64,000 nucleotides of DNA from Trichosphaerium sp. ATCC 40318 (GCA_038496445.1 JALMLS010000143.1:248001-312000); one strand, 5' to 3'. Positions 2,664-29,000 are shown, counted from the stretch's first letter. Numbers and translations are program-made. Notes: a model not told the origin generated them from the letters alone.

Positions 2664-3458
2664 TTAAGTGATTGCTTTCACTTTGACGCCATTGATGTAA
2701 TGGCAATGGCAAGCTAACATACCTGTCTTGTCCCACTGCCTATACTCACCATCATAATCACCGTTGACATAGTGATATTGTACAAACAATTGACTATTTT
2801 CGTACCACTGCTTGTACTCTCCATGACACTCACCGTTGACATAGTGACACTGTACACTAATTTGACCATTGTAATACCACTTTTTGTAGTCTCCGTTGTA
2901 CTTGTCATTACCAAAATGACGATGCTCTGCTAATCTTCCATTTTGAAACCATTTCTTGTACTCTCCTTCACGTTTACCATTGACAAAGTTACACAGGGTA
3001 GCCATTTTGCCACTAAAATACCAACTTTTAAACTCTCCTTCTATCTTACCATTTACATAAAAACTTTGTACCCGTAGTTCTCCACTTACATGCCATCTCC
3101 TCCATACCCCTTCAGGTACACCACCAACGAAATTGTGCTCGTACTTTATCAGACCACTGTAAAACCAATTCTTCCATACCCCTTCTTTTTCTCCATTTAC
3201 ATAGTTACCTTGCTTATGCCGTCTACCGTTTTTATACCAAGATTTGTACTCTCCATGTTCCTGGCCATGTACCCAATATTCGTGGCATCCCCCTCTTGAG
3301 TGTTGTTTTAGCCACTTGCCGTGTTTGTTCAATTCGTTATCAAACCTTGATGTACTTGCCGTGTATTTTGATAATAAAGGCCACTTGTAATACACTTCCC
3401 AGTCTTGCTCAACGATAGCAAGGTGTAATTCGGTGGGTAATAGAAAAAGTGTATTCAT
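2664..3458 (-). CDS. Intronless F-box-like plus MORN-variant repeat protein, 264 aa
   Basis: MNTLFLLPTELHLAIV...WPLLSK N-terminus followed by 8 regular 24-aa units (e.g. EGEFKSWYFSGKMATLCNFVNGKR). Confidence 0.85.
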   Translation of the reverse strand: MNTLFLLPTELHLAIVEQDWEVYYKWPLLSKYTASTSRFDNELNKHGKWLKQHSRGGCHEYWVHGQEHGEYKSWYKNGRRHKQGNYVNGEKEGVWKNWFYSGLIKYEHNFVGGVPEGVWRRWHVSGELRVQSFYVNGKIEGEFKSWYFSGKMATLCNFVNGKREGEYKKWFQNGRLAEHRHFGNDKYNGDYKKWYYNGQISVQCHYVNGECHGEYKQWYENSQLFVQYHYVNGDYDGEYRQWDKTGMLACHCHYINGVKVKAIT

Positions 3459-14391: not shown

Positions 14392-15680
14392 TCTGCTTGA
14401 GTGGTATGATGCTGGTTGTTTGTAAATTATGATTGTATGTACAGCAAGAATTTACTAGACTTTTTTTAGACTTTACAGTAAAACACTTACCGTAAACGTT
14501 ATTCGCTCAATCCACAAATATTGCTGATGCGCGTTTTAGGATAAATGTCAGGCAAGTAGTTGCTTCCTTGTATGATATAACCACAATACAATAGTCACCA
14601 AAAAAGCATGGATACAGTCTATTTTTTTTCGCTGTTTTGTCTCTGAGACAATGACTAGGCGTGTTGGGTATGTTTTGGTGTTTGCGTTTTTACAACATTA
14701 CATGACCATTACTTGAATATTTCTTAGCTAAAAAAGAGGAATAACGTAGATAAAAAATATTGCTGGTGTTGTCCACGTGATAACTTGGTCTTCTTGATCA
14801 ATAGTGGTAATTATCAAAAACTACACAACAGCTAGTCAGAAAATACCAAACTATCTGTAAGGTTCTGAGGATTAAAATAAGAGAAACGTAAGCTGCCACT
14901 CAGGATTCAATGTAAGTACGTCGTGTCTATTTATTGTAATACTACATTCCTTTTTTGTTTTGAATGTGTTGACCAACTGTAAGGATAAATGTGCTCGCCA
15001 TGGAATGATCAGTGTCAACACCAATATCAAAATTACAAGAATAGCTACAACTATAATTTCTATCACTTCTGGTAGCACTGGAAAATCAGAGCCACAATCC
15101 GATTGTGTTGAACAGGATTAAGAAAATAAGATGACTAAACTTGTTGTTATTATGCACTTTGTTTAAAGTCTGCAAGTGATACGTTTTATTATCAATTTCC
15201 AATCACGAAGTAATTTAAGTGGCATTTTATCTGCATAGATTTGAGTGAAACGTCTTTTTTTTCTTTTGAGTTTATTAATATAGCGATTGTTCCAAACGTA
15301 TAGATGTACAAATTGGATAAAAAATAATATCTCAGTTTTTTCGGATATGGCTAAATTACGGCCTTATAACTGTCCTTCAACCATTTTTTAACATCCTCAC
15401 AACGTATGAGACAATTTTCAGTCAAAGGGACGATCAAAACTACAAAATTATGTTAAAATGTTTTACCTCAAGCGCTGGCTATTTCTACGCATCGAAAGTA
15501 ATAAAAAGTGGTTTTGCGGCGACAGTAAAAAAAAAATCACGTGGCGGGCATATTGTCAAAAAAACGTCACCACTATCATTGTCAACGTATTTCTCTGTTT
15601 ACCGTACAGTACTGTAGTTGCTGCATATTTTTATAGACAACGAAGCTACAGCCTACCGCCAAGCCAAGTATTACAACAAA

Positions 15681-16951
15681 ATGAAAAGCGCTCATCACAT
15701 ACGTCATTTATTAGATTCGATTAATCTGGTTAGCACAGAAAAAGGCGTATTTGACCTTATTTCACTTCCAGTCGAATTAATAGTTCATATTCTGAAGCAA
15801 GGGACATATACACTCCCTGCAGCCCAAACTTGCCACTTTCTCCATGATATCGTTCATATCCATGTTGGATACAATGAAATCATCGTTAATAGCGACCACG
15901 AAGTTTCATTGCTTTCTGGTAGTCCGTTACTGCAAAATACACCAATTTGTTTTGGACCATTTAACCCAACTGACTGTGACTTGCGTTTATTTGCAGGAGT
16001 ACACACTATTAACCTCATGTTTTGCTCTGAAATAACAGGTGAGGGTGTCAAAGCATTAACTGGAGTACATGATATTAATTTGGAACTTACAAATGTTGTA
16101 GATGAAGGTTTGAAGTCATTGGCAGGAGTACACACTATTGACCTCAGGTTTTGCTCTGAAATAACAGATGAGGGTGTCAAAGCGTTAGCTGGAGTACATG
16201 GTATTAATTTGAAATGTACAAATGTTACAGATGAGGGTGTCAAAGCATTAACTGGAGTACATGCAATAAATTTGGAACAAACAAACGTTACAGATGAGGG
16301 TGTCAGAGCATTAACTGGAGTACATGAAATAAATTTGGAACATACATATGTTACAGATGAATGTTTGAAGGTATTAGCAGGAGTACACACTATTAAACTC
16401 AGGTTTTGCCGTGAAATAACAGATGAGGGTGTCAAAGCATTAGCTGGAGTACATGAAATTAACTTGTCAAATACAAATATTTCAGATGACAGTTTGAAGG
16501 CGTTGGTAGGAGTACACACTATTAACCTCAGGTTTTGCTCTGAAATAACAGATGAGGGTGTCAAAGCATTAGCTGGAGTACATGAAATTAAAACATACAA
16601 ACATTACAGATGAAGGTGTGAAGTCATACATAACATTAGCAGATGAGTAGGTGATGAAGGTCATTGGCAGGGATACATACTATTTGTTTGTGTAATTGTA
16701 CAAGGATAACAGATGAGGGTATCAAAGCGTTAACCGGGGTATATGAAATAAATTTGCAAAGTACAAATGTCACAGATGAGGGTGTCAAAGCATTAGCTGG
16801 AGTACATAAAATTAACTTGTCAAATACAAATATTTCAGATGACAGTTTGAAGGCGTTGGTAGGAGTGCACACTATAATATTGAAATTCTGCCGCTACATA
16901 TCAAATAATGGTATAAAGGCCTTGGTAGGCACAGACTATATATTAACATAA
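15681..16951 (+). pseudogene. F-box plus LRR array gene with a frame disruption at about 16590-16660 (or a truncated CDS ending at 16613)
   Basis: FDLISLPVELIVHIL F-box-like motif; 21/22-aa units such as LAGVHTIDLRFCSEITDEGVKA; the array resumes in ORF 16664-16951. Confidence 0.8.
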
Positions 16952-21322: not shown

Positions 21323-22276
21323 TTATGACTTGTACATTGTAAGATTTACAATGTTGCTATGTATCAACGCAGAGTGTCCATAAACTTCTTCACAGTACCT
21401 TTCTTTATAGGTTTTTACCTGAAAAAATACTTGGAGCGGAAACACATCAGGTGTGTTAGCATCTGCAACATGAGTGTGATAATCTTTTGCTTGAAGAGAA
21501 AAGATACCCGTATACCTAATTAAAGGCATACAAGCTATTGGTCTGGGTGCCATGGCAATATTAAACAAGAAAGGTATTTCAAACTTTTTTTTTTCTCCTG
21601 CCTTCAAAATGGCTGAAAAATCTTGCATTCTTGCATCAGGCGAATGGTAACTTGGTCCATAAAAATCCTTTTTGTTATTGAGATAACTACGTGGGTCACT
21701 GACAGTAGGTTTCCATATATATAAAGCACTTCCGCCTTCAATAACAGAACATTCATCAAAAATAAAATCGTGACCGTGACCAAGAAAAATGGTTTCTTCA
21801 TTTTTACCAATATTCTCAAGTACGAGCTTGAATGTTACTGTCTCTCCTTTATGAATATTTGTCTTATCGCTAGTCAGCTCTGATACAATATTAGGAACAA
21901 GTCTATTTTTATACTTCTCTTTCCACGTGCTAGCATCAACATTATACAAAGTCGGTGGCATTTCGAAAGTCGTTGTCAGTGGCGAGTATCCATCGTTTAA
22001 ATTTTTCTTAAGCTTCTCCTCTATTATGTCGTGGACTAGAGTCTCTATTTCTTCGGCGTCGGTACCCCATTTCTGATGGTACAACCGTTTGTAGATGTAT
22101 TCTTCGTCGGTTCGAATTATTTCGTTTAGAAAGTGGTTTGATTGTTGTAGTGAAGCTAAATCTTGCCACGAGAGGTTGTTACTCACAATAATATTTGAGA
22201 GTATCTCGAGAGGCAATGAAAATAACTTTGCGCTGTAAGTACATTCCGGAGAAGGAGGAGCACGCTTCGATTCCAT
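21323..22276 (-). CDS. Intronless F-box protein with a C-terminal beta-sandwich-like region, 317 aa
   Basis: LFSLPLEILSNII...LSWQDLASLQQSNHFLNEII F-box, WKEKY motif, then ELTSDKTNIHKGETVTFKLVLENIG. Confidence 0.85.
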   Translation of the reverse strand: MESKRAPPSPECTYSAKLFSLPLEILSNIIVSNNLSWQDLASLQQSNHFLNEIIRTDEEYIYKRLYHQKWGTDAEEIETLVHDIIEEKLKKNLNDGYSPLTTTFEMPPTLYNVDASTWKEKYKNRLVPNIVSELTSDKTNIHKGETVTFKLVLENIGKNEETIFLGHGHDFIFDECSVIEGGSALYIWKPTVSDPRSYLNNKKDFYGPSYHSPDARMQDFSAILKAGEKKKFEIPFLFNIAMAPRPIACMPLIRYTGIFSLQAKDYHTHVADANTPDVFPLQVFFQVKTYKERYCEEVYGHSALIHSNIVNLTMYKS

Positions 22277-22725
22277 TTCAGTGTAGTTTTCTAAAGACTT
22301 TTCAGTGACTGTTGTTGACCAAAAAACCTCGTGACTTTCTTATTAAGTAAAATGCGAATTTTCACAGAACAAGGAAGGTTAAAAACCTTTAGATTTTTAA
22401 ATGCAAGTCCAAAAAAGCGTTGCGAGTAATCGAAGCTATTTTTTCAAATCAAAACAATTCAAAACATAGTTGGTTCAAGCTGATAAACTGTTTATTTTTG
22501 TGTTTTACACACTTCTTCACAATGTAAGACGCCGTCTAAAACAACTACAGCCGGGAAGTTTTATCTATTTACTAGATATTTTTTGTATGGCTGGTGATGG
22601 CCTTTACCAGGTGTTGGACACGTGGCAGAGGAGTTAAACCTCGGTTTTGCATTGAAAAATCGAAAGGTTGGATTTCACTACCAAATTCGTGTATTCTGTT
22701 AAATACTCGGATGTAATTCGCTTTT

Positions 22726-22897
22726 TATTGTCCGTATCATTCAAGTTTGCGACAGGTTTGGCAGAAGTATCAAAGTGTAAGATCTTGCAAGAACTAACAA
22801 AACTGACAGATCTTGTAACTTCTGCTAGTTCTTGCAAGTTCTGTCAGATTTTGTCAGTTTTGATAGTTCTTGCAAGAACTGACAAAGGTTTGATACT
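22726..22897. mobile_element. Family A MITE left end or truncated copy
   Basis: Begins TATTGTCCGTATCATTCAAGTTTG, identical to 1898-1921, followed by the same subterminal CTGACAGATCTTG/AGAACT repeats; no matching right TIR found. Confidence 0.65.
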
Positions 22898-22967
22898 TGT
22901 GGAACCGGTGCAATGTGAATGCATCACATTCTATAACTCGTGACAACGTACCCTGCTTGCCGTCCTT

Positions 22968-23354
22968 ATGTACATTAAGGCAAGATGAAAAAGCACTGTT
23001 CAAAGTCATATCATCTAACAAGACGATCGCAGTATTTTACTTAGGTGCGCTAGAATAGCAACTTACAAAATTATGTAGATATCCGTTACTTGTAAGGAAT
23101 ACGCGTCAAAGGCATCAAAAGTTCTACCAGCGGTACAAACCACGCTTGACGTACCCAAGTAAGCAAAATAGCGGTTTATGCGCATTAACTAAATACAGAC
23201 AAAACCATCTGATTTGGCTGAAATTGTGGCTGCAAACGATGGGAAATTCGCTCGTTCACCATACCGCTCAGCAGCAACAGTTATAACGGTTAACGGCAAA
23301 ACTTCAACAGAGGCTTTGCAAGAAGGGGATGTCGTTCAATTTAGGCCAGAATAA
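22968..23354 (+). CDS. Small MoaD/ThiS-like beta-grasp protein lacking the terminal Gly-Gly
   Basis: Last exon TKPSDLAEIVAAN...VITVNGKTSTEALQEGDVVQFRPE* resembles the VNG...LxxGDxVxFxP pattern. The model needs a GC-AG first intron (AAG|GCAAG); the second donor is ambiguous. Confidence 0.5.
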
Positions 23355-23459
23355 GTGAAAATAACGCCCCAAGTAGAAGGAAGAACAACTTAAATTAGAA
23401 AAACATTTATTATTAAAACAACGGCGATTATAGTAGGAGTACGGAAAAAAACGAAAGCT

Positions 23460-24616
23460 TTAGGTGAACTTTCTTGAAGGGTAAACGTAATCCTTTGCAG
23501 AAACTTGCTTACGCCTAATATTACGAACAGTGTGGCTCTCGTGCTATTTGAAAAACGTCAGAATTTAACACAGACAGCAAAATAAAAGTAACTAAAACAA
23601 AGAACAAAATGAAATAAAGTTTGTACCTGCTTGTTCATTTGTGTCCATTGTCTGAAATCGATCATGTATTGCCATTGACCAGAGTCTACAGCGTGTACAT
23701 CGCAAGCAGATGGCGTCTAGAAAAGAATTATGCGTCAGATTGATCAAAAAACGGAAAAAAATCCAAAAAAAATCCAAAAAATGTTTTTGTACCTTTTTGT
23801 ACGTCTGGTACATATCCTCAATCATCTCAGATGCTGTAAGATCGTAGTTATAGAAGCCGTTATCTTCGTATTGCCAAACCTAAATTTATCCGTTAAAATC
23901 GTTTTTACGAATTTTGTTTTTGTTTTTTTTGTTATTTTGCGATGTAATTCGCTTTAAACTCTTCTCTTACCCAGCGCAATTCACCTTCATCTTCTGATTC
24001 AACTTCTCTAGAGCCATTTGATCTCTTTGAGGCCTTTTTAGGAGTGGTCTTGCGTTTTTTTTTTGGTGATGCTCTTTTAGCTGTTCGCTTTGCTGGAGCT
24101 TTTCTTTTCTTGCCAGTACTCTTCTTGGCCTTTTTAGCTGCTGGCTTCTTTGTTCTTTTTGCAGTTTTCTTTTTCGTGGAAGCTCGCTTTTTCTTTTTTT
24201 TAGGTGCTAGTTGAGCCTAAAGCGTTGATCTTAGAATGTGGGTGCATAATTTCGGTTTAAAAAGAGTGTACCTTGAGTTTTGGTGTTGCTCGATAAGAAA
24301 GTTTGGTTTGGGCAAGCAAACCATCTTCTACGGCCAATTTGATGGCGTTGAGAACGAACCGTTTGAACTTTTCAGGTACTGGGTATGTCTCTTCAAGATA
24401 TCGACAAATAGCGACGTAACTAACAGCTTTTCGCTTCGAAGTCTCTTCTTGTACTGCGGAGATGGCATTTGCGATCATACGTAGGTAAGAAGGCTTTGTT
24501 TTGCGTGTTACAGCCTTTTTTTTCTTGACTGTTCTCTTCTTTACTAGTGTTGGCTTTGGGGCCGTAGCCTTAGGCTTCTTGTTCTTAACTTCGCGCTTTG
24601 GTTGCTTTCTTGGCAT
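23460..24616 (-). CDS. Linker histone H1-like protein (H15 globular domain plus Lys/Ala/Pro-rich tail) fused to a C-terminal WWE domain, 283 aa
   Basis: Five exons (24616-24272, 24216-23971, 23879-23793, 23716-23627, 23543-23460), all phase-0 GT-AG. H15: KPSYLRMIANAI...VSYVAICRYLEETY...LNAIKLAVEDGLLAQTKLSYR. WWE: WVWQYEDNGFYNYDLTASEMIEDMY...YMIDFRQWTQMNKQHESHTVRNIRR. Confidence 0.88.
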
Positions 24617-24965
24617 GCTTACTAGCCGTTAGATTGAAATAATTGCCAAATTTCTTTGTTGTATTTTTATCAAGTTTAAGGATAAGTTTGTAAATGTTCA
24701 CTGATACCGACTTCGAAGAAGTAGTTGACTACTAACGATTGTCGTTGTAAATACCGCTAGGATATTACCATTCGTTACGAAACTACCTTTGTATGTCGTG
24801 CAACTACAACTTAAATATGTGAGAATACTCGTTGTTCTATGAAGAATGTTGGAAGATCAAAAAAAATCTGCTTCCTATCAATATCAGAGCTCTAACGCAA
24901 TGTTATTGGTGACACCTTCGTCAGTTTCTAGATTGGTACAATACAAGAATTTTATTAGGGCTTTA

Positions 24966-25897
24966 TCATTTGATTGATTTCGAGTCTTTTTCGTAGTCTT
25001 CTTGGCTCACTCTATATGCCCAGTGTTGCAATGTCTGCCTTACTACAGGCGACACACTAGGATCATCATACGATTTTCCTGAATTTATTATCTTCTTTAC
25101 TAAGTTTCTTCGCCATCTACCACGTGGACCGCATACACCTATCGGAAATTTACTTAACGCAAAGTACAGTCTGAGTACCTATCCATCTTTCAATTTGTCT
25201 GTCATCGTCATTGGTGCGTCTTCCGTTATAGTACCTGCAATACCACTGAAACCATCCTCTGTAGTTATTAGTATAAAATTGTAGCTACACAACTAACCTA
25301 GGGTCTTGCTCTATTATCCATTTTTTACTTTCCCATTCGTTCAAGTCAGCACCACTTTTGACTTTGAAGAAATTTACATTTTTAGAGTATGAGGTATTTG
25401 TGACTTGCTTCTTAATATCCAAACCTTCAAACCTATGTTTCAGACGAGTTACTCCTTGGTCATTTGCTGTAATAGTACCAGTCTTGTGGAAGTTCTTTCC
25501 ATCCAGTATTTGGATCTTCTGCCTTCTCAACTTTGTTTGTTATCGTAGAATTGATCGTCCGAAAGTAGCCACCGCCAAAACTACCACTTTGTAGCACTTC
25601 TTTCGGCGTCTAAATAGAACATAAGTTGGTTTTGTTCAAAACCAATAGTTTCAACTTGATGTAGCCTATTCGCGTATTACACGCGTCTTCAAGGTGTAAC
25701 AGCAGTACCATATTGGGTTTGAAAGCCTTGCAATCAGGAAATACTATTTCACCTCTAGTATTACGCTCTGGCTCCACGCGGGGATCATTGTCACTATTCT
25801 CCGTGACTTTATACCTTTTTTGCCCCGAAGCGTTGCAAGTACGTCGTTTTAGTGAAGTATTTAATGCTAGGTGTCTAGCTCGTACAGTCAGTAGCAT
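24966..25897 (-). CDS. Conserved hypothetical protein with GWFQWYCRY motif
   Basis: Spliced: FKPNMTPKEVLQSGSFGGGYFR...FKVKSGADLNEWESKKWIIEQDPRGWFQWYCRYYNGRRTNDDDRQIERW...GPRGRWR...SPVVRQTLQHWAY. Confidence 0.85.
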
Positions 25898-26067: not shown

Positions 26068-29000
26068 ATGTACAAAGACAGTTATATCTGTAAAAGCGAT
26101 GAGTTGCTCTATGTATGTTTGGGTGTGTAATGTTGCTGATTTCTTGGTAGGGATCCTACGTTTATACGGAGCCGAAGTCTCCAAGCGGTTCCTATACGTA
26201 CCAAACGCCCGATAATTACCTTAGCCATTACGAAGGCGTAATACACGACAATTTATACAGTAGCGCAACTGCTGCTTATGGCATTCAGTCCAGTGAGCAA
26301 CAAACAACCCCTAGAAGGCAAAACAGCCGTAATTGGAGCCAAGAGTTTTATAATCTTCAAGTACGCGGTTTTTATTTAGCATCTTAGGCGCCAAAACTTA
26401 TAATAACGCGTTTAATAAAGGGAAAAGTGACGTTAGGCAGAAACAGCACGGACAGACAACCAAACGCCAACACAGTACGAAGCAACAGTTAACAGCAATG
26501 TCAATTGAGACTTGGCTCTGTTTTCTATTTGTCACGCTTCTCTTTTGCCTCAAGTATTACCAACACATTACGTTTTAGGTCAGCGGACTTTGTGACATTC
26601 AATCAGCATTCGCTGCACGTGCCACTGAAATAGGAAAAATAATAATTGCTGAGAGATTTGTACCTCTAAAAGATCGCAAAATTAAGCCTGTAGATGTTGG
26701 CGGTACGTCTCAATTTAATCTTAATTTGAACTGATATTTTCTGAAGGGATAGCTGGCGGCTCTAAATTTATTGTTGAAGGTATTTTCTTCAAGTTTGCAA
26801 CTGATGGTAAGCTAAGAAATGTTTTATTGTTTTTGCTTTGTTGGTCTATTGTTAACTTGTATTTTTGTAGAAAGGAACCTGTACGGTGGTGATGAATACG
26901 CAATGAAGAGTGTAAACCATGAAGTGAAGGGTATTACAAGTCTGATAGATTGGCAGCTGGATACAGTTGGCTTACATCAAATCAAGTTCCCTATTTTGGT
27001 AGTAATTGATTATTTGGGATATCGTCTTTCGGCTTCTTCAGTCCTACCATTGGGAAAAGAAACATTAGTAATTGGTTCTGCTGATGGAGGTATTACCATT
27101 AATCAGCCAGGTGAAAATGCGAAGCAAAGCGCAAAGTATTTGAATGACCTTGTCCATCTTTGGTTGTCAAGGGTAAATCTCGCAAGTCATTGTATTATTA
27201 GTAGAAAGAACAAAACGAAAAGTAAGCCAATATTGGGTCCTTTTGATTTGGAAGGTCATGTTAGTTATGATGGACATTTGTATATATGCGATCTAGCACG
27301 ACTTTTTCCTCCAGCAGCAAGACAAAAAGGTAAATCTACTTCTGTTTGAGTACCTTCTTCGAAAACAAGAATTTTCTAAGATTAATTAAAAATTAGGTTT
27401 ACTTGGTTGCCACTTGTATAGATTACTCCGACCAGAGTTTTGCAAAAAGTACACATATCCTTTATGCTCAGACGGTAATAATCCACTAAAAAAAATCATG
27501 TAAACTATCCAGTAAATAATTGTTTAGCGTTCATTCCATTGGTAGAAAATGTGGATAAATTTAATAAAGATATCCGTATTGCTACTGAATATTTAGAGGT
27601 ACACGTGATTAATATTATTTTTTCTATACCCCATGTAGTTGTTAACTGTAAATTAAGGATGTTGTTTTACCCTGGAGTGCTGCTATTTTATCATCGTTCC
27701 CTTGTTTACCACCTTTACGTGTTTTAAGGGTACGTACCTACATTACTTCCAAGAACCTCAAGTTTCTTATTGTTTTATTGTTTAGCTCATTATCCATCAA
27801 CATGGATTAAATTACCGATATATATGGCTGCTTGCTCAATATGTTACCACACCAGCACTTAAACAAGCACTACTGACGGTACATTATTCACAACATGAGT
27901 TTGGGTTTTTTCTCACTGTTTTAAAGGAAGTAGTTGCACGCACTCTGAAGAATATCATTAGACACCGCTTACGCAAATCTGGTAATAATGCAGGTTAGTA
28001 CTCCTTCTTTATCTTGTCTTAGTCTCATATTGTTTTTTGTTAGCCTTTGGCAACGAAATGGGTAAAGTCCTATCTTTGGCGCTTACAGAATCAGATGCAG
28101 GAGATGCGTTTTGGGTGCAACTTCAAGCTGAAGTAAAAAAGAGGTTTGTTATAAGGAGTAAAGTACCAGAGAGTGTAAAAGAGATGCACGCCCTTGCGAA
28201 AACTGTATCTCCAAGACGTTTAAATGAGACTATAACATCATACATCTACGCTCTTGCCATTAATGATGAACCCAAGGTATGTTTTGCAACTCCTTGTTTG
28301 CCTGAGTTATTGCAATACTACTTCTAATCACAATGAATAGGATTCACCTTTAGGCGATATTGTTGTTGTAAAGCGGAGTGATTTATCTCCATCATTATTG
28401 ATACATAGCCTTCAAGAATTGTTGTCGTTTTCGTTTAAACAATCATCACTTGAACGGTTTGAACGTATTTTTAGTGGGCAACCAGGTGAGCCTTCTCCTA
28501 AGAAGAGTGTTACTTGTGAATGTGGAAATCCGGCAATATCCAGAAGTGTAACAAAGGGTCCAAACAAAGGTAAGTTAATACTGTATAGTTAAATGCTGAT
28601 TCATATTTGTAGGGCGCTCAATGTGGTGTTGTGCAAAAATTATAAATGATAAATGTAATTTCTTTGAGTGGGTATGCGAAGATAATTCACGGAACAAGTT
28701 TATTGTTACAGCTGATGATATTGAAGCAAGTTGGCCAAAGTACTAAACCACAAACAAATGTTTGTTGCTTTGTTTTTAACCTCCTTTGACCTTAGAGTCC
28801 GTAAGAGCTATCTCTCATATTTTCAAGACGCCGTACAATTCAAATCAGTTGCAGACGCAGCAGAAGATTTTCACTCTCACGAGTTATACCTGAAGAAAGC
28901 AGCCGGTAAGTACTTTTTTTTGTTTAACTATTTTCTTTCTTATTTTTTCTTATTTAGACTGTTACATGTCTTGCTTGGAAATCAATACACGGAATGCTTT

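What the first reader, a model, noticed from the sequence alone, without database searches (positions are those of the whole stretch)
23460..24616. Linker histone H1 fused to a WWE domain: candidate poly(ADP-ribose)-reading histone
Seen: five exons with phase-0 GT-AG introns give one 283-aa frame: basic N-tail, H15 winged-helix domain, a long K/A/R/P tail with SPKK and TPKK sites, a short acidic linker (EVESEDEGE) and a complete WWE-like domain (WVWQY...FYNY...IE.MY...YMIDF...QMN...RNIRR). Known: WWE domains of the RNF146/Deltex/PARP type bind iso-ADP-ribose using aromatic residues, Gln and a C-terminal Arg; H1 is normally a PARylation target displaced by PAR. Inference: this protein could couple linker-DNA binding to PAR sensing, for example in damage-regulated compaction. 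I do not recall this architecture being described but could not search.
Basis: partly seen in the sequence, partly recalled or inferred. Interest (0 to 1): 0.8.

Follow-up and report, generated by a model that had tools for sequence, protein, structure and literature searches.

The report
Amoeba linker histone carrying WWE domain
This is a real, expressed amoeba gene for a DNA-packing linker histone H1 that ends in a WWE domain, a module that in other proteins binds ADP-ribose; the combination was already noted in a giant virus and sits unnamed in databases, and its function is untested.

Summary
A five-exon, 283-residue gene on the minus strand (24616-23460) is reproduced exactly. All four GT-AG introns are removed in assembled transcripts from four studies. 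Single contigs join the H1 exon to the WWE exons.

Exon 1 is a linker-histone H15 domain (Pfam E 3e-12). Its own model matches H1.0 and H5 at Z 11.9. A lysine-rich tail (net charge +36) follows, then a WWE domain.

The architecture is not new:
- About 72 proteins share it, including three named amoebozoans (Dracoamoeba, Filamoeba, Planoprotostelium).
- The clandestinovirus "H1-WWE" protein, described by Talbert et al. 2022, is 36% identical to a cellular member.

The family's WWE keeps the residues that contact ADP-ribose in TRIP12 and HUWE1. Reading of ADP-ribose on chromatin is therefore the likeliest function, but it is untested.

The window's copy has the most divergent WWE of 103 such domains. 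It alone has His at an otherwise invariant Arg. All five coding differences between runs are synonymous.

The same WWE subtype is also fused to histone H2A in amoebae, which I found described nowhere.

This scan had earlier noted other H1 fusions in this genome (TerD, vWA). None of its look-ups showed this fusion noted on other DNA.

The parts
24272..24616 (-). Exon 1 (residues 1-115): start codon, basic N-terminal tail (net +17 over 40 residues) and the H15 globular domain
   Evidence: Model. Pfam Linker_histone E 3.1e-12. Transcript contigs reach 24618-24628.
24302..24496 (-). H15 winged-helix domain (residues 41-105)
   Evidence: Pfam match to residues 41-105. AlphaFold model of the window's own residues 37-109 has pLDDT 91.5. 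Best structural matches are H1.0/H5 globular domains in chromatosomes: Z 11.9, rmsd 1.2 A over 65 residues, 37% identity.
24217..24271 (-). Intron 1 (55 nt, GT..AG, phase 0)
   Evidence: Skipped in contigs of four runs.
23971..24216 (-). Exon 2 (residues 116-197): K/A/R/P-rich C-terminal tail with SPKK and TPKK, acidic stretch 185-196, and the first residues of the WWE domain (L195 R196 W197)
   Evidence: The H1 tail and the start of the WWE lie in the same exon, so the fusion is not read-through between two genes.
23880..23970 (-).
   Evidence: Joint 23877/23969 (cut +2, i.e. 23879/23971) in four runs.
23793..23879 (-). Exon 3 (residues 198-226): WWE strands 1-2 and the helix. Holds Y201 (adenine-stacking position) and F206.
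   Evidence: Pfam WWE 22.4 bits, profile 2-29. Alignment to the family and to TRIP12.
23717..23792 (-). Intron 3 (76 nt, GT..AG, phase 0)
23627..23716 (-). Exon 4 (residues 227-256): WWE middle strands. Holds H234 (Arg in all other family members), Y243, Q252 and N254.
   Evidence: Pfam WWE 19.2 bits, profile 34-57..
23544..23626 (-). Intron 4 (83 nt, GT..AG, phase 0)
23460..23543 (-). Exon 5 coding part (residues 257-283 plus stop at 23460-23462): last WWE strand with T261, R263, R266, R267, and a 15-residue C-terminal extension
23390..23459 (-). 3' untranslated region with AATAAA at 23406-23411. Transcript contigs end at 23390-23397.

Best explanation
The locus is an intact, transcribed nuclear gene of an amoebozoan. 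It encodes a member of a conserved 'H1-WWE' family: a complete linker histone (basic N-tail, H15 winged helix, lysine-rich disordered tail) whose C-terminus is a specialised WWE domain.

Shown here: the gene model, the single mRNA, both domain identities, the H1-like fold of the window's own H15, the family's breadth, and conservation of the ADP-contacting residues.

Inferred mechanism: the H15 domain and basic tail seat the protein on the nucleosome dyad and linker DNA, as H1 does. The WWE at the end of the flexible tail binds the ADP-ribose moiety, either the terminal ADP-ribose or internal units of poly(ADP-ribose), placed on neighbouring chromatin proteins by PARPs. This would make it a histone with a built-in ADP-ribose reader, in the same way that macroH2A is an H2A with a macro domain. 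Binding could either hold this H1 on modified chromatin or help to release it; which of the two cannot be told from sequence.

The window's copy is the most divergent member in its WWE, so its ligand affinity or preference may differ from the family norm.
For: Gene and transcript.

H15:
- Pfam E 3e-12.
- The family profile matches H5/H1.0 over the globular domain plus basic tail, E 6e-16.
- The window's own H15 model has pLDDT 91.5 and matches H1.0 in a chromatosome at Z 11.9.

WWE:
- Pfam on exons 3 and 4; family HMM 106 bits.
- The model of homologue P0004 has WWE pLDDT 81-92 and matches TRIP12 (TM 0.80), HUWE1 (0.81) and RNF146-iso-ADPr (0.66).

Ligand residues:
- The profile alignment to TRIP12 reproduces the residue numbers given by Munzker et al. 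2024 (PMC11269756).
- It maps window Y201=W771 (Tyr107 in RNF146), Y243=Y809, Q252=Q818, N254=N820, S259=T823, T261=T825 and R263=R827.
- Five of the seven are identical; Y201 and S259 are conservative replacements.

Family:
- 103 proteins carry this WWE subtype, 72 of them with H15.
- Named amoebozoans are Dracoamoeba, Filamoeba and Planoprotostelium.
- 16 WWE positions are invariant across 29 members at mean column identity 54%, which indicates strong constraint.
- 5 of 5 coding differences between runs are synonymous.
Against: - No binding or localisation data exist for any member.
[quoted passage not shown] Which form of ADP-ribose, if any, is read is therefore open.
- The window's WWE has the lowest family-HMM score of 103 (106 against a median of 131) and a long branch (0.98 against a median of 0.17).
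- It is the only one of 86 with His at the invariant Arg (H234).
- Talbert et al. 2022 doubt that the viral H1-WWE condenses chromatin. The medusavirus H1 is reported not to act as a linker (cited in PMC12724268).
- The structure of the window's own WWE was not modelled.
Confidence: 0.6

Rival explanations
1. The H15 domain and basic tail serve only as a DNA or chromatin tether. The WWE acts as a protein-interaction module or binds a free adenine nucleotide (ADP or ATP) rather than protein-linked ADP-ribose. The protein would then be a chromatin-anchored adaptor, not a compaction factor that senses PAR.
For: - Human WWE domains also bind ADP and ATP in crystals (PMC11269756).
- Talbert et al. 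raise this doubt for the viral H1-WWE.
- Unverified notes of this scan report H15 joined to TerD and vWA domains in the same genome, which suggests H15-plus-tail is used as a portable targeting module.
- The wing loop of the family's H15 is about five residues shorter than in H5.
Against: - The adenine-, phosphate- and ribose-contacting residues are the ones kept invariant.
- The full tripartite H1 layout is conserved and matches H5/H1.0 along the tail as well.
- The same WWE subtype sits on histone H2A, which points to a chromatin-intrinsic role.
Confidence: 0.2
2. The window's copy is a drifting or re-purposed paralogue. Its WWE pocket has been weakened or retuned by Arg-to-His at the invariant position, Trp-to-Phe at 206 and other changes, so it no longer behaves like the rest of the family.
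For: - Lowest HMM score of 103.
- Terminal branch 0.98 against a median of 0.17.
- Unique His among 86.
- Its H15 is ordinary, ranking 45 of 73, so the acceleration is specific to the WWE.
Against: - All seven positions mapped to ADP contacts are kept: five identical, two conservatively replaced.
- The frame is intact and the gene is transcribed in four studies.
- 5 of 5 coding polymorphisms are synonymous.
- Phe at the Trp position occurs in 8 other members.
Confidence: 0.15
3. The gene was recently acquired from a giant virus, as an endogenised viral histone, and is not an old cellular gene.
For: - Clandestinovirus encodes a 226-residue member of the family, 36% identical to P0004.
- LCPAC304 encodes another.
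- Notes of this scan mention giant-virus-like genes in this genome.
Against: - The gene has four spliceosomal introns, one of which lies inside the WWE coding region next to the tail.
- GC is flat at 0.36-0.39 across the 64 kb.
- Members occur in at least three other named amoebozoan genera.
- One member is an intronless gene among cellular neighbours in Planoprotostelium.
- No relative was found in IMG/VR with the family's motifs.
Confidence: 0.04
4. Artefact: two neighbouring genes or a chimeric assembly misread as one gene.
For: None found.
Against: - Single spliced contigs in two runs span all five exons.
- The tail and the first WWE residues share exon 2.
- About 72 homologues have the same layout.
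Confidence: 0.01

Closest known systems
Clandestinovirus H1-WWE protein (CV_ORF99, UniProt A0A8F8PQR7, 'Bifunctional linker histone H1/H5'), and the H1-WWE of the pithovirus-like MAG LCPAC304
   Same: Same order of domains: H15, basic region, C-terminal WWE. It is 36% identical to the cellular member P0004 over 239 aligned columns, Foldseek E 2e-18. It is named 'H1-WWE' in PMC9145170.
   Different: It is viral and shorter (226 residues). The window's gene is cellular, has four introns and belongs to a wide amoebozoan family that the paper does not describe.
Planoprotostelium fungivorum PROFUN_10339 (PRP82131.1, UniProt A0A2P6NDX2, 'WWE domain-containing protein')
   Same: Carries PF00538 plus PF02825, is 314 residues long, and has the same WWE subtype.
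   Different: It is an intronless gene with a more divergent H15 (a faint Pfam hit). It is uncharacterised and not named as a histone.
Canonical linker histones H1, H1.0 and H5
   Same: Tripartite layout, H15 fold (Z 11.9, rmsd 1.2 A, 37% identity), lysine-rich tail with S/TPKK sites.
   Different: Canonical H1 ends in the basic tail. Here a folded WWE domain follows it. The wing loop is about five residues shorter than in H5.
WWE domains of TRIP12, HUWE1, RNF146, DTX1, ZAP and PARP11
   Same: Same fold (TM 0.66-0.81). Same adenine-binding Gln, stacking aromatic (Tyr, as in RNF146), and phosphate-binding Tyr, Asn and Arg.
   Different: Only about 21-28% identical to P0004 (Foldseek), and the profile E-value is only about 1e-4. 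This subtype has extra invariant residues (D, R, S-G, H, R-R) and, by my recollection of the RNF146 sequence, a shorter first hairpin without an RNF146 Arg110 equivalent. It is attached to histones, not to E3 ligase or PARP catalytic domains.
macroH2A
   Same: A histone with a globular ADP-ribose-binding module attached by a basic linker. This is the functional analogy.
   Different: It is a core histone H2A with a macro domain, unrelated in fold to WWE, so it is not a relative. The closer parallel to macroH2A is the H2A-WWE fusion noticed in passing.

Membership tests
Linker histone H1/H5 (Pfam PF00538) | H15 globular domain recognised by the family profile | tested here: met
   47 bits against a cut-off of 22.4, E 3.1e-12, residues 41-105.
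Linker histone H1/H5 (Pfam PF00538) | Three-helix winged-helix fold like GH1/GH5 | tested here: met
   The window's own residues 37-109 were modelled at pLDDT 91.5. Top matches are all H1.0/H5 globular domains: Z 11.9, rmsd 1.2 A over 65 residues.
Linker histone H1/H5 (Pfam PF00538) | Tripartite layout with a long lysine-rich disordered C-terminal tail | tested here: met
   Residues 111-184 have net charge +36 and are 34% Lys, with SPKK and TPKK sites. The family profile aligns to the H5/H1.0 tails. The tail is disordered in the P0004 model.
Linker histone H1/H5 (Pfam PF00538) | Binds the nucleosome dyad and linker DNA, and compacts chromatin | not testable with these tools
   Needs nucleosome-binding assays or localisation.
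WWE domain (Pfam PF02825) | Match to the family profile | tested here: met
   Exon 3 alone scores 22.4 bits (cut-off 21.1). Exon 4 adds 19.2 bits on the next part of the profile. Full-length homologues score 41-56 bits. The spliced protein could not be scanned whole because it has no reference.
WWE domain (Pfam PF02825) | Half-barrel of strands with one helix | tested here: inconclusive
   Met for homologue P0004: strand-strand-helix followed by four strands, TM 0.80 to TRIP12 and 0.81 to HUWE1. The window's own WWE was not modelled. It is 55-59% identical to P0004 in tblastn over exons 3 and 4 and aligns without gaps.
WWE domain (Pfam PF02825) | Adenine-binding Gln, stacking aromatic, and phosphate-binding Tyr and Arg | tested here: met
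   Window Q252, Y201, Y243 and R263 (plus N254 and T261) align to TRIP12 Q818, W771, Y809 and R827 (N820, T825). Their roles are taken from PMC11269756.
WWE domain (Pfam PF02825) | RNF146-type iso-ADPr specificity: Tyr107 plus the positive Arg110/Trp114/Lys175 pocket | tested here: inconclusive
   The Tyr107 equivalent is present (Y201). The hairpin is acidic (E202 D203) with no Arg110 equivalent, and Phe replaces the Trp114 position. The RNF146 positions rest on my recollection of its sequence plus PMC11269756.
WWE domain (Pfam PF02825) | Binds poly- or mono-ADP-ribose | not testable with these tools
   Needs ITC, fluorescence polarisation or a PAR overlay.
Amoebozoan/viral H1-WWE family | H15, basic tail and C-terminal WWE in one polypeptide | tested here: met
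   One spliced mRNA. Full-length phmmer alignments to 23 representatives, E 1e-31 to 3e-58.
Amoebozoan/viral H1-WWE family | Subtype signature of 16 invariant WWE positions | tested here: not met
   15 of 16 are kept. The invariant Arg is His234 in the window, the only exception among 86. Three nearly invariant positions also differ (W to F, V to I, T to M). I still file it as a member because of the 106-bit HMM score and its placement in the tree.

The most novel reading that the evidence does not exclude
Amoebozoa may possess a system of 'reader histones' not described in any paper I could search. One highly constrained WWE subtype is built into both the linker histone (H1-WWE, about 72 sequences) and a core histone (H2A-WWE, 16 sequences, including Sappinia pedata). 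Nucleosomes themselves would then sense ADP-ribosylation, as a convergent counterpart of macroH2A. Giant viruses that replicate in amoeba nuclei (clandestinovirus) would have captured the H1 version to interfere with or exploit that signalling.
Probability: 0.35. Interest if true: 0.7.

Novelty: new member of a known kind. Interest (0 to 1): 0.5.

Why it matters
In animals, H1 is a target of PARP1 and is displaced from ADP-ribosylated chromatin. macroH2A is the one well-studied histone with a built-in ADP-ribose reader.

A conserved amoebozoan family in which H1, and separately H2A, carries a WWE module would show that chromatin-embedded ADP-ribose reading evolved more than once. It would offer a simple natural system to test how a reader tethered to the nucleosome changes compaction or repair.

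It also gives the viral H1-WWE a cellular family to be compared with. That bears on the debate over where giant-virus histones came from.

For this locus taken alone, the result is a solid annotation of a member of an architecture already on record.

Tried and rejected
Searches that found nothing useful:
- phmmer of single exons against PDB sequences gave nothing for exon 3, chance hits only for exon 4, and nothing for exon 1 at E 0.001. Profiles of the family were needed instead.
- An exact look-up of the exon-1 ORF found no record. The window's own protein is in neither protein database; the best relative is 42% identical.
- An IMG/VR scan with the WWE alignment found no confirmed relative.
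- The ESM Atlas returned only a histone H5 cluster at 0.75.
- Pfam on the neighbouring ORFs gave nothing useful.
- The Wang et al. 2012 paper on RNF146 is not held. I used Munzker et al. 2024 instead.

Full report
**Observation**

- The exons are 24616-24272, 24216-23971, 23879-23793, 23716-23627 and 23543-23460.
- All four introns (55, 91, 76 and 83 nt) are phase 0 and have GT..AG ends.

Public run contigs were laid on 22500-25500.
- All four introns are skipped in each of four runs from four studies.
- In runs X2 and X8 a single contig (943 and 917 nt) runs from the 3' untranslated region (23397/23423) to just upstream of the ATG (24618/24628) with every intron removed.
- Intergenic bins on both sides have zero depth. 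The runs therefore behave as transcriptomes, although their kind is only guessed in the record.
- No contig ends between the H1 and WWE exons.
- The K-rich tail, the acidic stretch and the first WWE residues (L195 R196 W197) lie in the same exon 2, so this is not read-through between two genes.
- An AATAAA lies at 23406-23411, and contigs end 9-16 nt beyond it.
- Five coding differences between runs are all synonymous.

**Domain identity**

H15 domain:
- Pfam finds Linker_histone in exon 1 (47 bits, E 3.1e-12, residues 41-105).
- An alignment whose first row is the window's own residues 37-109 (A3) gave an AlphaFold model at pLDDT 91.5 with three helices and a short hairpin.
- Its best structural matches are all H1.0/H5 globular domains in chromatosome structures: Z 11.9, rmsd 1.2 A over 65 residues, 37% identity.

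Tail:
- Residues 111-184 carry net charge +36 and are 34% Lys. They hold SPKK at 165 and TPKK at 173.

WWE domain:
- Pfam finds WWE in exon 3 (22.4 bits, above the 21.1 cut-off, profile positions 2-29) and in exon 4 (19.2 bits, positions 34-57).
- These are consecutive parts of one domain split by intron 3.

**The family**

A search of 1.84 billion representatives with exon 1 returned 53 proteins.
- About 23 of them align to the spliced protein from end to end (phmmer E 1e-31 to 3e-58).
- All seven of these that I scanned carry Linker_histone plus a C-terminal WWE in Pfam.

A profile search and a WWE-only search raised the count. A local HMM finds 103 proteins with this WWE subtype:
- 72 have H15.
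- 16 have a histone H2A fold.
- 15 are other or fragmentary.

Members with an organism name are:
- Dracoamoeba jomungandri (P0004);
- Filamoeba sp. ATCC 50430 (P0190, P0200);
- Planoprotostelium fungivorum (PRP82131.1 / A0A2P6NDX2, 'WWE domain-containing protein').

The rest are metatranscriptome contigs of about 1.1 kb. The Planoprotostelium gene is intronless and sits among ordinary cellular genes. All named carriers are Amoebozoa. Other notes of this scan call the window's organism a marine amoeba; I did not test that.

The WWE subtype is strikingly constrained. It has 16 invariant positions and 54% mean column identity across 29 members, whose H1 parts are only 32-46% identical to P0004 in the 23-member A1 alignment.

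**Structure of the family**

The model of P0004 shows:
- a confident H15 domain (pLDDT above 94);
- a disordered tail;
- a WWE domain at pLDDT 81-92, with a dip to 68 in the loop that holds the invariant D-V-R and S-G.

Foldseek matches:
- H15 to H5/H1.0, TM 0.78-0.89;
- WWE to TRIP12 with ADP (TM 0.80), HUWE1 (0.81), RNF146 with iso-ADPr (0.66), and also DTX1, ZAP and PARP11.

The family profile also matches H5 and H1.0 along the basic tail (E 6e-16). It shows a wing loop about five residues shorter than in H5.

**Ligand pocket**

The profile alignment to TRIP12 reproduces exactly the residue numbers that Munzker et al. 2024 give for ADP contacts: Trp771, Tyr809, Asn820, Thr823, Thr825 and Arg827, plus the adenine-binding Gln (PMC11269756). 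This validates the mapping.

In the window the equivalents are Y201, Y243, N254, S259, T261, R263 and Q252. All are kept or conservatively replaced.

| Feature | This family | Comparison |
|---|---|---|
| Stacking residue | Tyr | Tyr in RNF146, where its hydroxyl contacts the distal ribose of iso-ADPr; Trp in TRIP12 and HUWE1 |
| First hairpin | Acidic (E202 D203), no Arg110 equivalent | Like TRIP12 and HUWE1, which prefer terminal ADP-ribose |

The hairpin also looks shorter than in RNF146, but that rests on my recollection of the RNF146 sequence.

ADP-ribose binding is therefore well supported by sequence, but the preferred form is open.

**What is odd about this copy**

- The window's WWE has the lowest family-HMM score of 103 (106 bits against a median of 131).
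- Its terminal branch is 0.98 against a median of 0.17.
- It alone among 86 has His (H234) where all others have Arg.
- It also has F for W at 206 (as do 8 others), I for V, and M for T.
- Its H15 is average, ranking 45 of 73.
- I could not tell whether the invariant Arg faces the pocket. It sits at the start of the third strand, in the less confident loop of the model.

**What is already known**

Full-text searches found one paper that names this architecture.
[quoted passage not shown] They report an 'H1-WWE-like protein' in the MAG LCPAC304.
- They doubt that it condenses chromatin.
- The virus's own paper lists it simply as linker histone H1/H5, CV_ORF99 (PMC8383183).

Searching the P0004 model against viral structures returns that protein first: A0A8F8PQR7, 226 residues, E 2e-18, 36% identity over 239 columns. 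That identity is as close as cellular members are to each other, so the viral protein belongs to this family.

I found no paper describing the cellular family or any functional test.

**Origin**

- GC is flat (0.36-0.39) across the window.
- There is one copy in the window.
- The gene has four spliceosomal introns, and members occur in several amoebozoan lineages.

A cellular origin with capture by viruses is the simpler reading.

**Verdict**

- The structural interpretation is supported.
- The functional interpretation is plausible and specific but untested.
- The claim of an undescribed architecture is refuted.

The locus is a new, unusually divergent, cellular member of a known but unstudied kind. 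The more novel by-product is that the same WWE subtype is fused to histone H2A in amoebae (Pfam-confirmed in P0106 of Sappinia pedata, P0102 and P0178). I found this described nowhere.

**Limits**

The spliced protein has no reference. I therefore did not submit it whole to Pfam, the structure predictor or the database searches. Per-exon references, local HMMs and the homologue P0004 stand in for it.

Noticed in passing
Not in the window: proteins P0093, P0094, P0096, P0098, P0099, P0101, P0102, P0104, P0106, P0178, P0184, P0185, P0191, P0194, P0195: Histone H2A (histone fold plus H2A C-terminal docking segment) fused to the same WWE subtype. One is from the amoebozoan Sappinia pedata; the rest are from metatranscriptomes. 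Most form one well-supported clade in the WWE tree (11 of 15, support 97/95). This looks like a WWE counterpart of macroH2A, and I found no paper on it.
   Followed up: partly
Not in the window: P0001 (2451 aa, KAK2517653.1, Columba guinea) and P0002 (1561 aa): Giant proteins with 13-17 tandem H15-like repeats were the top-scoring hits to the window's H15 domain. They may be real poly-H15 proteins or an annotation merge of an H1 gene array.
   Followed up: no
Not in the window: P0112 (573 aa, Acytostelium subglobosum): EF-hand domains followed by the same WWE subtype. Small WWE-only models (P0108-P0111) on long contigs group in the tree with H15-bearing members, so they may be truncated gene models.
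   Followed up: no
runs X1, X2, X8, X12: The same spliced mRNA is present in runs filed under three different coded organism labels (A, B, F), with at most three base differences per contig. Either one organism is filed under several names, or it is carried along in other samples.
   Followed up: no
window 22726-23354, + strand: A convergent neighbouring gene ends at about 23354, roughly 40 nt from the H1-WWE transcript end. Spliced transcript pieces lie at 22726-23158, with loose ends at 23045-23051. Its last ORFs have no Pfam match.
   Followed up: partly
window 21323-22276 (-), 2664-3458 (-), 15618-16613 (+), 26819-27349 (+): Other long ORFs in the window: a 317-aa ORF with only a weak F-box-like hit (E 0.006), a MORN_2 repeat protein, an LRR_6 repeat protein, and an exon of a CLU (clustered mitochondria) homologue.
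   Followed up: no
Not in the window: P0055, P0056 (JGI): Two H1-WWE proteins are labelled 'DNA-directed RNA polymerase delta subunit' by their source. This is most likely a mis-annotation caused by the charged low-complexity tail.
   Followed up: no
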